Shown here: positions 4,765 to 61,951 of the stretch, one piece after another
How positions within the stretch are numbered: position 1 is the stretch's first letter
Layout of the letters: every line of letters begins with the position of its first letter
NCBI RefSeq assembly: GCF_001194135.2
Contig: NC_068983.1
Location: forward strand, 163,220,664-163,284,575
Source of the DNA: Octopus bimaculoides
Lineage: Eukaryota
DNA: 63,912 nucleotides
Direction of reading: 5' to 3'
Translations under genes and position numbers: made by a program
Notes under the pieces: generated by a model
What the model saw: the letters and a program-made list of their open reading frames with translations, nothing else
Told to the model about the DNA's origin: nothing
Databases searched by the model: none

Positions 4765-4967
4765 AGGCGGTGGGCTGGTAGAACCTTTAGGATGCCGGGA
4801 TAAATGTTTAGTGGTGTTTCGTCCTTCTTTACGTTCTGGGTTCAAATTCCGCTCAGGTTGACTTTTGAGTTCGATAAAATAAGTGTCTGTTAAGAATTGG
4901 TGGCGATGTAATAGAATTAACCCACAACTAAACATTGATGTCTCTTTGCTAAAATTTGAAACCAACG
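4765..4967 (+). mobile_element. SINE family B (tRNA-like head), degenerate
   Basis: ggcggtgggctggtagaa...gttctgggttcaaattccgc...gataaaataagt...gatgtaat...aaatttgaaacc; homologous to 17210-17427. Confidence 0.8.
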
Positions 4968-26030: not shown

Positions 26031-26149
26031 TATGAATATAATATGAAGACATCGTCGAATGTCTTTTCCAGTTGCTGCTTTTAAGTTAGTCATTGCCAGG
26101 GACATTCCTGGCCAAAGCTCATGTAAGTATTTAAGTATAAAAAGGGTAA

Positions 26150-26240
26150 AACCGCCTTCGGTCATGAATGACCATGATGTTGCACCTAGAAAGTGCCCCC
26201 CCCCCCCAAGGCATAAGCCCGGGCAAGGTTATTTATGGAA
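26150..26240 (-). mobile_element. SINE family C 3' tail fragment
   Basis: ccttcggtcatgaatgaccatg...gcacctagaaag...aagcccgggcaaggt..ttatggaag matches 54385-54470. Confidence 0.85.
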
Positions 26241-29200
26241 GAGTCTGGACATCGAAGCAAGAGCAATATACCTAGACCCGGAAAGTAGGCTGGTCGTCTT
26301 GGATGTCGATGGCAGCAATGGATGTGCTTTTCGACTGATAACAGTTTATGCACCGTCCTTAACAGGCCGACCAGATTTCTTTCGACGTTTAGAGGTTTTC
26401 CTGGGGACATCTCGACCTTTACGTTTAGTGGGGGATTGGAATGCTACCCTGGACACGCATCTAGACTATGTGGGCAGAGATAATAATAGTAGGGGATGCA
26501 AATGCCTCAAAGACCTGCTCAGACGTTTCAAACTGTCTGACAGGTACCAACTGGACCACACGAATGTGGCAATGTGGACATGGAGCAACCGCATCGGGTC
26601 GTCCAGGTCGTATTTAGATAGAGTATTCTGTAGGACAGTGGATAAGGATAGTGTAGGTTGTCCACAGTTACACATAGTAAGTTACACAGACCACAAATTT
26701 GTGACTTGTACACTTGATTTAGATAAGACACATAGGCAGGGTCCCGCTTACTGGAAGCTGAACGCGTCGTTCACGGCACGACAGGGACCGAATTAACACA
26801 TTAGTTAATAGAGCATTGACGGGTGCCATCATCAACAACAGATGTGGTATGCCCTAAAGAAAGCAATTAAAGCAGAATCGGTGAGGTACAGTAAGGCCCT
26901 AGCATTAGACTGAAATAGAATAGAGGGAGACCTAGTTAAGAAATTAGAAGAGGCACTTAGAACTGGCATCGTGTTCAACGTACTGGCGGTGAGGTTGGCC
27001 CTCGACCAACACTTCAACGCCAAGCACGAAGGATGCGTTGTCAGAGCTAGGATGCATGCTCTGAGGAACGAAAGAGTTGGTGCCGCCAGAGTGGTGGAGG
27101 CGCAACGAGGCAACAGAGCCACCATTAGGTCCTTCACAGATGAACAGGGGCGCGAAGTACTCGAGCCTGAAAGGATGTGTGAGGCCTTTCAACAAGACTT
27201 CGTCCGACTGTTCAGGACAACTGGTGGGTCAGAACGCAGAGTGGACTTTAGTGCCTACCTGCATGGCCTGCCACGACTCTCAGCAAGAGAGGTGGAGTGT
27301 TGTGAAAGAAACATCACAGCCGCGGACGTACGGGATGCGATGGCAGGCTGCGCGAGAGACAAGTCACCAGGCTTGGATGGTCTGCCCTACGAACTTTATT
27401 GTCATATGCCAGACTTGTTTGGAGGCGTCTTGGCAGCTAGCTGTCTACAGCAACTAGCAACAAAACGGGAGTATCCCTGTCTTTGTATAGGGAGAAGCTA
27501 AAGAAAGATCCACACAAAGGGGAATGTCATAGATAACTTCAGGCCCATCACTCTGCTCAACGCAGATTTGAAAATTTTGGCCAAGGTGTTAGCCGAGAGG
27601 TTGGCGCTTGTCATCGAGAAACTTGTCGACAAGGTGCAAACGTGTGTCGTGCCGGGTAAGAGTATCCATGACAACATTCATCTGATGCGCTACATCATAG
27701 ACAGAGTAGTTAAGGAACCTGGCATAGGTGGGGCCCTGAGCAATTTGGATCAATCAAAGGCTTTCGATAGGGTAGACCACCACTACTTGGAGGCTGTCCT
27801 TAGAGCGGCTAGTTTCGAACCCAACTTCCGCGGTTGGATCGCTGCCTTATACAGCAGCATCCGCTCGGTAGTTCGCGTAAATGGTCATCTATCCAGACCA
27901 TTTAACATCATGCGTTCGGTTCGTCAAGGATACTGCCTCTTGTCGCTTCTGTATGTATTGACCCTTTAACCACTACTCCAGAAGCTGGCGACGCTGAGGG
28001 GCATCCCACGAGACCTGGCATGTGGGAGGAGCATACGAACGACATCGCCATCATAGTGGCGAGCCACAAGCACATCGACCTGGTCGGTGAGTCACTAAAA
28101 GAAATAGGAAGCGGTAATGGTAGCAAAAATTAAAACGGGAAAAGTCAGTGGGTTTGCGGCTCGGTACCTGGGGAAGCAAGCCCATGCCGCCCAACAGCGT
28201 CTCCATCGTGGCACGCTGGACCGACGGACCGGTTAAATTTCTCGGAGTCTGGTTGGGGCCGGACCTCCAAATGGAGAAGAACTGGGGCGAAATAACGACT
28301 AGGGTGGCCACACTCACACAGCAATGGGCCGAGACGAAGTTATCCCTAAAAGGTCGTGCAGATGTGGCGAAAGCGTTCATTGCATTCGTCATCGATTACC
28401 GTCTGACTGTCGTGCCTTGTCCCGACCCTATCATCACCAAACTGGAATACATACTCTTCTGCTTCTTGTGGAAGGGAAGCGTTCCGATGGTTAGGCGATC
28501 CATTTGCTGACAACACCCGCTAACTGGAAGGCTAGGCATGCCGTGGTTGATGCTGCGTAGACATGCGCTGAGACTGCGATATCTCTGGCGCTTCATAGAC
28601 GACGGTGAACAGGTGTGGTCGCCATTTGTGAAGCGCGCTTCTCCGCAGCTCGTCTCCTTGACCTGACTGCAGTAGAAGATCAAAGAGAGACCGAGGCTAG
28701 GTGAATGGCANNNNNNNNNNNNNNNNNNNNNNNNNNNNNNNNNNNNNNNNNNNNNNNNNNNNNNNNNNNNNNNNNNNNNNNNNNNNNNNNNNNNNNNNNN
28801 NNNNNNNNNNNNNNNNNNNNNNNNNNNNNNNNNNNNNNNNNNNNNNNNNNNNNNNNNNNNNNNNNNNNNNNNNNNNNNNNNNNNNNNNNNNNNNNNNNNN
28901 NNNNNNNNNNNNNNNNNNNNNNNNNNNNNNNNNNNNNNNNNNNNNNNNNNNNNNNNNNNNNNNNNNNNNNNNNNNNNNNNNNNNNNNNNNNNNNNNNNNN
29001 NNNNNNNNNNNNNNNNNNNNNNNNNNNNNNNNNNNNNNNNNNNNNNNACGTCCTCGGGCAGAATCTGGGCGTCGACGAGGAACACCTGATCCGCCTGTTG
29101 AGGACAACTTTCGGGTCGGGACCTATGGACAATCACCAAAGATCCCTGGCCTGGTAGTGCTATCGAGAAGCATTACCCGTTCGGGATAAGCTCTACAGGT

Positions 29201-29456
29201 ACGGTTCGAGACACATCGGACCGACTTGCCCGAGATGCGGTAAGGGCAACGAAACCGTTCTGCATGCACTCGTGCAGTGTCCAACTATTTCGGACATGTG
29301 GGCTTATGGCGAACGGCTGCTGTCACGTGTGGGACGAGTCCGCCTGTCGGTTTCAGATTTTGTCTCGTGAAAGTTTCAAAAACAGGTGAGCGAATGTAGC
29401 AAAGATGTTGCGTGCAAGTGACGAAACCACTTTGAGCATGATCCTGTAAATCGAAA

Positions 29457-29553
<97 letters not shown>

Positions 29554-29823
29554 CACTTTACTTTCATGTGTTTAATCCCTCCCTGCCTGAGGTGACCGTG
29601 GTCTTTTCCGTGGGCGTTTCTTTCCGCGTATAAACCTGATCTTACTTTTTACGTTTTTAAAACTCTTCTGTGATGCACGATCCCTCTTGATCATTTTTTT
29701 CCCGATCCCTTTTGATCGAATTTTACTTTTTTTTCCTATTTTCCCCCTTTTTTTCATTTTCGAAAAGCTCTACATTTGTATTTGTCCCCTCTGTGTTCAG
29801 CCGTGTGTGGCCAATAAAGAAAG
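26232..29823 (+). mobile_element. Tx1/L1-clade LINE ORF2 (APE endonuclease, RT, CCHC) and 3' UTR; 5'-truncated, frameshifted, contains an assembly gap
   Basis: EN: RLITVYAP...LVGDWNA...WTWSN...SYLDRVF...YTDHK...YWKLN. RT: KSPGLDGLPYELY, NFRPITLLNAD.KILAKVLA.RL, LDQSKAFDRVDH, VRQG. C-terminal CPRCGKGNETVLHALVQC. T-rich 3' UTR with aataaa, then (TATC)n/(CT)n. Confidence 0.95.
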
Positions 29824-29835
29824 TTATCTATCAAC

Positions 29836-29884
<49 letters not shown>

Positions 29885-29905
29885 CATCCATCCATCCATC
29901 CATCC

Positions 29906-29959
<54 letters not shown>

Positions 29960-60862: not shown

Positions 60863-60987
60863 GAAAAAAAGAATCTAACCTGCTCACATTTGAAATTAAC
60901 TCAGCCATTTATAAAGCCGACAACTAGATGAGGGTTGAGAGGTGACGCTTCATATTCATCTAAGATATCTTGACACTAATGATATTC

Positions 60988-61633
60988 TTTTCTACTCTAC
61001 GCACAAGGCCCGAAATTATTGGAGAAGGGGTCACTCGATTACATCGATCCCAGTACGCAACTGGTACTTAATTTATCGACCTCGAAAGGATGAAAGGCAA
61101 AGTTGACCTCGGCGGAATTTGTACTCAGAACGTAACGGCAGACGAAATACCGCTAAGCATTTCGCCCGGCGTGCTAACGTTTCTATTTCTTTATTGCCCA
61201 CAAGGGGCTACACACAGAGGGGGACAAAGAAGGACATACAAATGTATTAAGTCGATCACATCGACCCCAGTGCGTAACTGGTACTTAATTTATCGACCCT
61301 GAAAGGATGAAAGGCAAAGTCGCCCTCGGCGGAATTTGAACTCAGAACGTAACGGCAGACGAAATACCGCTAAGCATTTCGCCCGGTGTGCTAACGTTTC
61401 TTATTTCTTTATTGCCCACAAAGGGCTAAACATAGAGGGGACAAACAAGGACAGACGGAGGAATTAAGTCGATTACATCGACCCCGGTGTGTAACTGGTA
61501 TTTAATTTATCGACCCCAAAATGATGAAAAGCAAAGTCGACTTTGGTGGAATTTGAATCTAGAACGTAACGGCAGACGAAATACCGCTAAGCATTTCGCC
61601 CAGCGTGCTAACGATTCTGCCAGCTCGCTGCCT
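60988..61633 (-). mobile_element. Head-to-tail trimer of SINE family B
   Basis: Three ~220-bp units, each with gtactcagaacgtaacggcagacgaaataccgctaagcatttcgccc-like sequence. The two upstream units end in tail type 2 and the last in tail type 1. Confidence 0.93.
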
Positions 61634-61732
61634 TCCTGATATTAATGTTATCAAAACTCCTCCGATTCACTCCACTCGTGAAATACAAACGAAAATATGT
61701 CTCAAGTTCCATTAAAATATAAATGATAAGCG

Positions 61733-61951
61733 CATGCGTGGTTGTGTGGTAACAAACTTGATTTCCAACTACATGGTTCTGGGTTCAGTCCCGCTGCGTG
61801 ACACTTTCGGCAAGTATCTTCTGTTGTAACCTCGATCCGCCGAAAGCCTTGAGTGGATTTGGTTGAGGGAAACTGAAAGAAATCCGTAGTATATATGTAT
61901 ATGTATATATATATGTACATATATGTATGTGCGTATGTATGTATGTATGTA

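What the first reader, a model, noticed from the sequence alone, without database searches (positions are those of the whole stretch)
61175..61460. SINE-B alternative tail matches the 3' end of the Tx1-like LINE: candidate SINE-LINE partnership
Seen: SINE tail (minus) tacatttgtatgtccttctttgtccccctctgtgtgtagccccttgtgggcaataaagaaa versus LINE end at 29771-29823 tacatttgta----tttgtcccctctgtgttcagccgtgtgtggccaataaagaaa, and similarly 53017-53068. That is ~50 nt of clear homology ending exactly at the LINE terminus. Other B copies carry an unrelated tail. Established: shared 3' ends mark SINEs mobilised by stringent LINEs, usually CR1/L2/RTE types, and are uncommon for L1/Tx1. Inference: one SINE head and body has swapped tails to use two LINE machineries, and the Tx1-like RT may recognise its own 3' end. 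This modular SINE, its Tx1-like driver and the multimers form the best candidate undescribed system in the window.
Basis: partly seen in the sequence, partly recalled or inferred. Interest (0 to 1): 0.75.

Follow-up and report, generated by a model that had tools for sequence, protein, structure and literature searches.

The report
Octopus SINE trimer with LINE-derived linkers
Two units of a three-unit copy of a common octopus short repeat (SINE) end in about 45-55 bases copied from the very end of a nearby L1/Tx1-type LINE. This shows a real tail swap, but nothing here shows that the LINE ever moved the SINE.

Summary
On the minus strand, 61404-61462 and 61186-61245 match the last 42-43 nt of both LINE copies (ends near 29823 and 53068) at 84-88% (E about 1e-8), ending exactly at the LINE terminus AATAAAGAAA.

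The context weakens the interpretation. Both LINE-like tails are internal linkers of one 653-bp SINE trimer (61634-60982, minus strand, 217-bp period). The trimer ends in the family's ordinary tail and has a probable 13-bp target duplication around the whole unit. It does not lie in (TATC)n, the microsatellite that adjoins the 3' end of every LINE copy seen. No stand-alone tail-2 SINE is in the window, and no further octopus DNA could be reached.

- The LINE has APE, RT and zf-RVT domains (L1/Tx1 group).
- Its 3' terminus plus (TATC)n is conserved in Argonauta relatives.
- The SINE tails are as close to LINE copy 1 (37/42) as the two LINE copies are to each other (34/42).
- The ordinary tail 1 weakly resembles 3' ends of a second LINE lineage of the same group.

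Verdict: a real, LINE-derived tail exchange in a modular SINE. A Tx1-like partnership is plausible but unproven. Moderate interest.

The parts
60982..61634 (-). Composite SINE-B trimer, 653 bp, made of 2.7 units of 217 bp
   Evidence: TRF reports period 217, 2.7 copies, 89% matches. Sequence read; alignment.
61635..61647 (-). Candidate 5' target-site duplication CATTAATATCAGG, abutting the SINE start
   Evidence: Matches 60969-60981 at 10/13, and all 3 mismatches are transitions. Fixed-position test with +/-2 nt slack gives p about 0.008. A free search was not significant.
60969..60981 (-). Candidate 3' target-site duplication CATTAGTGTCAAG, abutting the end of tail 1
61404..61634 (-). Unit m1: full head (AAGGCAGCGAGCTGGCAGAATCG...), body and tail 2
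61404..61462 (-). Tail 2 of m1, the LINE-derived segment ending in AATAAAGAAA
   Evidence: 88% over 42 nt to 29781-29822, E=1.2e-8. 37/42 columns match LINE copy 1.
61397..61403 (-). Junction TAAGAAA between the m1 tail and the truncated head of m2
   Evidence: Nearly identical to the second junction.
61186..61396 (-). Unit m2: head truncated at CGTTAGC, body and tail 2
61186..61245 (-).
   Evidence: 84% over 43 nt to 29781-29822. TACATTTGTA also matches the LINE upstream of an 8-nt insertion.
61180..61185 (-). Junction TAGAAA between the m2 tail and the truncated head of m3
60982..61179 (-). Unit m3: same head truncation, body, and the ordinary tail 1 (60982-61033)
   Evidence: Tail-1 profile hit at 61035-60978, E=1.6e-12.
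26053..29823 (+). LINE copy 1. It is 5'-truncated and frameshifted, with an assembly gap at 28711-29047. It carries APE, RT and zf-RVT domains and a 3' UTR.
   Evidence: Pfam Exo_endo_phos, RVT_1 and zf-RVT. tblastn with Argonauta ORFs.
29771..29823 (+). 3'-terminal segment of LINE copy 1 that is shared with SINE tail 2
29824..29959 (+). (TATC)n microsatellite directly after LINE copy 1
   Evidence: TRF; sequence
52597..53069 (+). LINE copy 2, a 5'-truncated 3' UTR fragment whose terminal segment 53017-53068 is shared with tail 2
   Evidence: blastn 29360-29867 against 52609-53112
52479..52596 (+). (TCTC/TATC)n directly upstream of LINE copy 2
53070..53296 (+). (TATC)n grading into (TCTG)n directly downstream of LINE copy 2

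Best explanation
The flagged stretch is the inner part of one old, composite copy of the abundant octopus SINE. That SINE has a head with Pol III box-like motifs and a body that the literature calls CORE-type. At some earlier point a variant arose in which the normal tail was replaced, exactly at the body/tail boundary, by the last 53-60 nt of an L1/Tx1-group LINE that inserts next to (TATC)n microsatellites. Template switching during reverse transcription is the likely cause, but that is inferred. In this locus the variant is joined head-to-tail to a head-truncated ordinary SINE. The junction was then duplicated, most simply by unequal crossing-over between the SINE bodies, or the element descends from a dimeric or trimeric master copy. 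The result is [full SINE + tail 2][truncated SINE + tail 2][truncated SINE + tail 1]. The whole 653-bp unit was probably integrated once, through tail 1, at an ordinary site. So the LINE-like segments here are fossil linkers. They show that a tail-2 RNA or master copy once existed. They do not show that the LINE mobilised it.

Shown: the homology, its terminal position, the trimer anatomy, the absence of (TATC)n, and the conservation of the LINE terminus.
Inferred: template switching, unequal crossing-over, and integration through tail 1.
For: - Homology. Tail 2 is as close to LINE copy 1 (37/42) as the two LINE copies are to each other (34/42), and it is further from the Argonauta LINEs.
- Tail 1 and tail 2 diverge right after ...ATCGACTTAAT in the alignment of 12 units.
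- The trimer has a 217-bp period, a full first head and two internal heads cut at the same base.
- Both junctions are nearly identical (GGGCAATAAAGAAATA[A]GAAACGTTAGCAC), which implies one origin.
- A candidate 13-bp TSD abuts both consensus ends, p about 0.008. Other SINE-B copies have 13-bp and 9-bp TSDs.
- The unit bodies are about equally distant from each other (9-15%) and from an independent copy of the same subfamily (10-15%), so the composite is as old as ordinary copies.
- The same TSD-(SINE)n-TSD architecture is described in a bivalve (PMC11481361).
- The LINE sits at (TATC)n in all four 3' junctions seen, but the trimer does not.
Against: - Only one locus is available. Genome-wide copy number, the existence of monomeric tail-2 SINEs and other multimers could not be examined.
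- The TSD is imperfect (10/13) and was not significant in an unconstrained search.
- Two independent template switches at a pausing site in the head cannot be fully excluded.
- A tail-2 SINE could have been integrated by the LINE elsewhere, and the trimer would not reveal it.
Confidence: 0.55

Rival explanations
1. SINE-B with tail 2 is a genuine SINE subfamily that the Tx1-like LINE mobilises by recognising its own 3' end, and the multimer is a by-product of that system.
For: - 42-53 nt of 84-88% identity end exactly at the LINE terminus. This lies within the 35-61 bp and 72-95% range accepted for SINE-LINE pairs in bivalves (PMC11481361).
- The LINE terminus TTGTGGC[C/T]AATAAAGAAA plus (TATC)n is conserved between Octopus and Argonauta LINEs that share only 49% amino-acid identity. 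This suggests selection on the 3' end.
- Each tail-2 segment is followed by a short imperfect repeat of the terminus (TAAGAAA or TAGAAA), as if it had once been an RNA 3' end.
- A Tx1 family is already thought to drive SINEU (PMC4494074).
Against: - No tail-2 unit in the window terminates an insertion.
- No (TATC)n lies at either tail-2 end or around the trimer.
- The composite ends in tail 1.
- The shared segment has no significant secondary structure: z from -1.7 to +0.1, and only a 3-4 bp hairpin.
- There is only one locus.
Confidence: 0.3
2. A SINE-derived tandem repeat. The 217-bp unit (truncated head, body and LINE-like linker) belongs to a satellite-like family that grows by unequal exchange, and this locus is a short array or a retrocopy of one.
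For: - 2.7 regular units at 89% identity.
- The junctions are identical.
- SINE-derived tandem arrays are reported in bivalves and squamates (PMC11481361).
Against: - Only 2.7 units are present.
- The array starts with a full head and ends with a full ordinary tail inside a candidate TSD, which is typical of one retroposed or locally expanded element.
- There is no other array in the 64 kb.
Confidence: 0.1
3. Chance or compositional resemblance of two T/C-rich, AATAAA-containing ends.
For: Both segments are pyrimidine-rich and end in a polyadenylation-like motif.
Against: - blastn E=1e-8 in the window.
- The profile finds exactly the four sites, with a gap of 14 orders of magnitude in E-value to the next hit.
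- 70 metagenome contigs that share the 18-mer show no extended similarity.
Confidence: 0.02

Closest known systems
SINE-LINE pairs with a common 3' tail, including tail exchange in CORE-SINEs (MIR/L2, MIR3/L3, Mar-1/RTE, AFC/CiLINE2; table in PMC3747384)
   Same: One head and body carries alternative 3' tails copied from LINE 3' ends. The homology length and identity here (42-53 nt, 84-88%) are typical.
   Different: The donor is an L1/Tx1-group LINE. Only 3 of 58 catalogued pairs involved L1-clade LINEs (PMC3472496). The tail is seen only as an internal linker, not at the end of an independent insertion.
Microsatellite-specific Tx1-clade LINEs: Kibi (TC)n, Koshi (TTC)n and crocodilian (TTCC)n/(TTTC)n families. 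Also SINEU driven by Tx1-Mar (PMC4494074).
   Same: The LINE has APE, RT and a C-terminal zinc-binding domain, is associated with a microsatellite, and is proposed to drive a SINE.
   Different: The repeat here is (TATC)n. The SINEU link rests on a shared target and poly(A), whereas here the link is a shared 3' sequence without a shared target. Tx1-clade placement was not tested.
TSD-(SINE)n-TSD multimers in the blood clam Scapharca broughtonii (PMC11481361)
   Same: The first unit has a full head, the internal units share one head truncation, the last unit has the complete tail, and a single TSD pair flanks the whole.
   Different: In the clam the internal units carry a truncated version of the same tail. 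Here they carry a different, LINE-derived tail.
L1-mediated chimeric retrocopies made by template switching (U6/L1 type, cited in PMC4494074)
   Same: A small-RNA-like sequence is fused 5' to a short 3' fragment of a LINE. This is the likely way tail 2 was joined to the SINE body.
   Different: The fusion lies at an internal point of the SINE (the body/tail boundary), is embedded in a multimer, and is not at the LINE's target.

Membership tests
SINE (Pol III, tRNA-type head; CORE superfamily per literature) | Short, multicopy, dispersed element flanked by TSDs | tested here: met
   12 units of about 200-230 bp in 64 kb. TSDs of 13 bp (12/13) and 9 bp (9/9) occur at two copies.
SINE (Pol III, tRNA-type head; CORE superfamily per literature) | tRNA-derived head with A and B boxes | tested here: inconclusive
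   A B-box-like GAGTTCAAATTCC and an A-box-like TGGCAGAATCG are visible. ARAGORN finds no tRNA, and Rfam finds nothing in 60900-61900 at E<=1.
SINE (Pol III, tRNA-type head; CORE superfamily per literature) | CORE central domain | tested here: inconclusive
   Alignment to a MIR consensus recalled from memory was not above shuffles. The literature states that octopus SINEs are mainly tRNA-Core and tRNA-Deu and that OR1/OR2 is a CORE-SINE.
Stringent-type SINE-LINE partnership | SINE 3' region is homologous to the 3' terminus of the LINE | tested here: met
Stringent-type SINE-LINE partnership | The shared tail forms the 3' end of independently inserted SINE copies | tested here: not met
   Both tail-2 segments are followed by another SINE unit, and no other tail-2 copy is in the window. 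A genome-wide test was not possible.
Stringent-type SINE-LINE partnership | Shared target site or 3' repeat with the LINE | tested here: not met
   The LINE copies end at (TATC)n. The trimer and its junctions have none.
Stringent-type SINE-LINE partnership | Conserved 3' stem-loop or trans-mobilisation dependent on the tail | tested here: inconclusive
   Only a 3-4 bp hairpin appears, with no significant z-scores. The mobilisation assay is not testable with these tools.
Tx1 clade of L1-group LINEs | APE endonuclease, RT and a C-terminal zinc-binding domain, with an L1-like RT | tested here: met
   Pfam Exo_endo_phos, RVT_1 and zf-RVT. The nearest solved structure for the Argonauta relative is human L1 ORF2p at E=2e-37, against R2 at 4e-25. 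ORF1 carries a CCHC knuckle.
Tx1 clade of L1-group LINEs | Target-specific insertion | tested here: met
   (TATC)n adjoins the 3' end in 4 of 4 copies, and both flanks in window copy 2 and Argonauta copy 2. The 5' flank of window copy 1 is not (TATC)n.
Tx1 clade of L1-group LINEs | Phylogenetic placement of the RT within the Tx1 clade | not tested
   No reference Tx1 or L1 clade sequences were available in these tools.
TSD-(SINE)n-TSD multimer | Full first head, identical head truncation in later units, complete tail only on the last unit, and one TSD pair | tested here: met
   The TSD is 10/13, p about 0.008.

The most novel reading that the evidence does not exclude
The main octopus SINE family behind the octopus-specific SINE expansion takes its 3' tails from L1/Tx1-group LINEs, not from RTE or CR1 types. 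Tail 1 would come from one lineage and tail 2 from a (TATC)n-targeting lineage. This would imply stringent 3'-end recognition inside the L1/Tx1 group in an animal, and would name the LINEs that drove the expansion.
Probability: 0.2. Interest if true: 0.7.

Novelty: new member of a known kind. Interest (0 to 1): 0.4.

Why it matters
SINEs make up roughly a tenth of octopus genomes. The papers reached here name no partner LINE for them. SINE-LINE pairs that share a tail are rare in the L1 group, at 3 of 58 catalogued pairs. A confirmed tail from a microsatellite-targeting Tx1-like LINE would add an animal case of sequence-specific template recognition in that group. It would also point to which LINEs drove the octopus SINE expansion. 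As it stands, the locus only proves that the tail exchange happened.

Tried and rejected
1. I translated the trimer and searched the 5.8-billion-protein set for ORFs spanning SINE plus tail 2. It gave one weak O. bimaculoides hit that is not locatable, so no octopus ORF-level data exist there.
2. I scanned the metagenome collection for TTGTGGGCAATAAAGAAA. All 70 contigs were chance matches, and L041 is bacterial. Viral and GTDB collections gave nothing for the tail or the SINE core.
3. A look-up of a window ORF found nothing on record.
4. LINE relatives at 40-45% identity (cuttlefish L078, ENA L079) lack the tail-2 terminus and (TATC)n. Short contigs L080-L082 add little.
5. Tail 1 against tail 2 or the LINE end was not significant.
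6. RNA folding of the shared segment showed no significant structure.
7. Rfam and ARAGORN gave nothing for the SINE head. The CORE test with a recalled MIR consensus was uninformative.
8. A full-text search of the paper library for the tail and SINE strings found nothing, and no paper found names an octopus SINE-LINE pair. Repbase and Dfam could not be consulted.

Full report
**What is at the coordinates.** Read on the minus strand, 61634-60982 is a 653-bp head-to-tail trimer of the window's commonest SINE, called 'SINE-B' here. Tandem Repeats Finder reports a 217-bp period, 2.7 copies and 89% matches.
- Unit m1 (61634-61404) has a complete head (AAGGCAGCGAGCTGGCAGAATCGTTAGC...).
- Units m2 (61396-61186) and m3 (61179-60982) both start at CGTTAGC.
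- m1 and m2 end, after ...ATCGACTTAAT, in a 59-60-nt 'tail 2' that finishes with GGGCAATAAAGAAA.
- m3 ends in the ordinary 'tail 1' (...GGCCTTGTGC..GTAGAAAAGAATAT).
- The two junctions are almost identical, AATAAAGAAA-TAAGAAA-CGTTAGC and AATAAAGAAA-TAGAAA-CGTTAGC, which points to a single origin for the junction.

Nine other SINE-B copies lie in the window: near 4780, 10937, 16357, 17165, 17215, 19165, 20352, 22237, 32277 and 60443, where 16357 is a fragment. All of them carry tail 1 in one of two subtypes.

blastn within the window aligns the m1 tail to 29781-29822 at 88% over 42 nt (E=1.2e-8) and the m2 tail at 84% over 43 nt. A profile of six tails hits exactly four sites in the window, the two LINE ends and the two SINE tails, with E between 3e-17 and 2e-14. 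The next hit has E=0.6. The similarity ends at the LINE terminus AATAAAGAAA. Over the terminal 42 columns, the m1 tail matches LINE copy 1 at 37/42. That is more than LINE copy 1 against copy 2 (34/42) and far more than against the Argonauta relatives (25-29/42). Tail 2 is therefore derived from this Octopus LINE family. Chance is excluded, since 70 metagenome contigs sharing the 18-mer show no further similarity.

**The LINE.**
- Copy 1 (about 26053-29823) is 5'-truncated and frameshifted and contains an assembly gap. It retains Exo_endo_phos, RVT_1 and zf-RVT matches. It aligns to APE, RT and C-terminal ORFs of an Argonauta hians relative.
- Copy 2 (52597-53069) is a 470-bp 3' fragment.
- The RT of the Argonauta relative is closest to human L1 ORF2p among solved structures (E=2e-37, against 4e-25 for R2). 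Its ORF1 has a CCHC knuckle.
- Both window copies are followed directly by (TATC)n, and copy 2 is also preceded by it.
- The two Argonauta copies end in TTGTGGCTAATAAAGAAA followed by (TATC)n.
- The 5' flank of window copy 1 is not (TATC)n.

This is an L1/Tx1-group LINE associated with (TATC)n, like the microsatellite-specific Tx1 families Kibi and Koshi and the crocodilian (TTCC)n families (PMC4494074). I did not test Tx1-clade placement by phylogeny. The terminus is conserved between lineages that share only 49% amino-acid identity. That argues the 3' end matters to the element. More distant relatives (cuttlefish L078, ENA L079) lack it.

**Why the partnership is not shown.** In this window tail 2 never ends an insertion, because each copy is followed by another SINE unit. 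The composite ends in tail 1. A 13-bp direct repeat abuts both consensus ends of the whole trimer: CATTAATATCAGG at 61647-61635 and CATTAGTGTCAAG at 60981-60969. It matches at 10/13, with all mismatches transitions, and p is about 0.008 with +/-2 nt slack. An unconstrained search was not significant. Ordinary SINE-B copies show 13-bp and 9-bp TSDs. There is no (TATC)n at the trimer or at its internal junctions, although every LINE 3' junction seen has one. By the shared-target criterion used for SINEU and Tx1-Mar, this copy was not integrated by the (TATC)n LINE. Folding gives only a 3-4 bp hairpin, GCC(C)-N5-6-(G)GGC, before AAUAAAGAAA, with z-scores between -1.7 and +0.1.

**Most likely history.** The steps below are inferred.
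1. A SINE-B variant acquired the last 53-60 nt of the LINE at the body/tail boundary, probably by template switching.
2. It became joined to a head-truncated ordinary SINE-B. The head sequence ...CAGAAT|CGTTAGC and the junction ...AAGAAA|CGTTAGC share AGAA, which would fit a microhomology-guided switch onto the 3' end of a tail-2 RNA.
3. The junction-bearing unit was then duplicated, by unequal crossing-over or by descent from a multimeric master.

The body distances are star-like: m1-m2 11.3%, m2-m3 9.3% and m2 to the independent copy c17215 9.9%. The composite is therefore as old as ordinary copies of its subfamily. The same TSD-(SINE)n-TSD anatomy is described in a clam (PMC11481361). The difference is that the internal tails here come from a LINE.

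**An unexpected lead.** A profile of tail 1 gives its best non-SINE hits, in 628 kb of mixed sequence, at the 3' ends of three copies of a second LINE lineage of the same group in L079 (E=0.016, 0.021 and 0.18). The next is the cuttlefish relative L078 (E=1.3), and all are above background, where the best chance hit has E about 3. The shared block is CCCCC..A/T-run..GGCCTTGTGCCA.AATTTG. This is weak evidence and comes from non-Octopus cephalopods. If it holds, both tails of this SINE come from L1/Tx1-group LINEs.

**Limits.** No further Octopus DNA was reachable. I could therefore not determine copy number, the existence of monomeric tail-2 SINEs, the partner subfamily or the age profiles. Repbase and Dfam could not be consulted. 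The papers reached describe octopus SINEs as tRNA-Core and tRNA-Deu, and L1-Tx1 as present and recently active. None names a SINE-LINE pair. Shared tails with L1-clade LINEs are rare, at 3 of 58 pairs (PMC3472496).

**Verdict.** This is a real LINE-derived tail exchange in a modular SINE, preserved as linkers in a trimer. It counts as a new member of a known kind and is of moderate interest until a genome-wide census is done.

Noticed in passing
window 26053-29959 and 52479-53296; L001 12729-12811 and 18797-18915: The L1/Tx1-group LINE is consistently joined at its 3' end to (TATC)n in Octopus and in Argonauta. Window copy 2 and Argonauta copy 2 have the microsatellite on both sides. This suggests a (TATC)n-specific LINE, a target not listed among the Tx1 families in the papers read.
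   Followed up: partly
window tail-1 segments (e.g. 16243-16303, 16953-17014, 17370-17432); L079 13196-13262, 19944-20006, 1598-1665; L078 13040-13100: The ordinary SINE-B tail 1 shares a block (C-run, A/T-run, GGCCTTGTGCCA.AATTTG) with the 3' ends of a second LINE lineage of the same group, found in a cuttlefish and an unidentified ENA assembly (E 0.016-1.3).
   Followed up: partly
L001 12789-12965 and 18898-19074: In Argonauta, the 177 nt after the (TATC)n of one LINE copy recur at 98.9% identity after the (TATC)n of the next copy. This is either a head-to-tail LINE array sharing a 5' UTR or an unusually long target duplication.
   Followed up: partly
window 16954-17172 (-) and 17208-17432 (+): Two SINE-B copies lie head-to-head about 35 bp apart, forming a roughly 480-bp imperfect palindrome.
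   Followed up: no
window 29680-29730 and 52880-52960: The LINE 3' UTR carries 2 (copy 1) or 3 (copy 2) copies of a small palindrome, CGATCCCTTTTGATCG. The SINE body ends in a different palindrome, GTCGATGTAATCGAC, at a comparable distance from the 3' end.
   Followed up: no
window 12854-13486 (-): A 210-aa ORF with helix-turn-helix matches typical of the N-terminus of a Tc1/mariner-type transposase.
   Followed up: partly
window 61740-61800 and 20670-20700: A second, unrelated SINE-like family (…GGTTCTGGGTTCAGTCCC…) lies next to the trimer and elsewhere. I did not examine its tail or a possible LINE partner.
   Followed up: no
L081 1706-1781: A related LINE fragment from an ENA metagenome ends in ...CTCTTGTGGCCAAT followed by CAACACACACATC instead of AAAGAAA plus (TATC)n. 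This may be a sublineage with another terminus or target.
   Followed up: no
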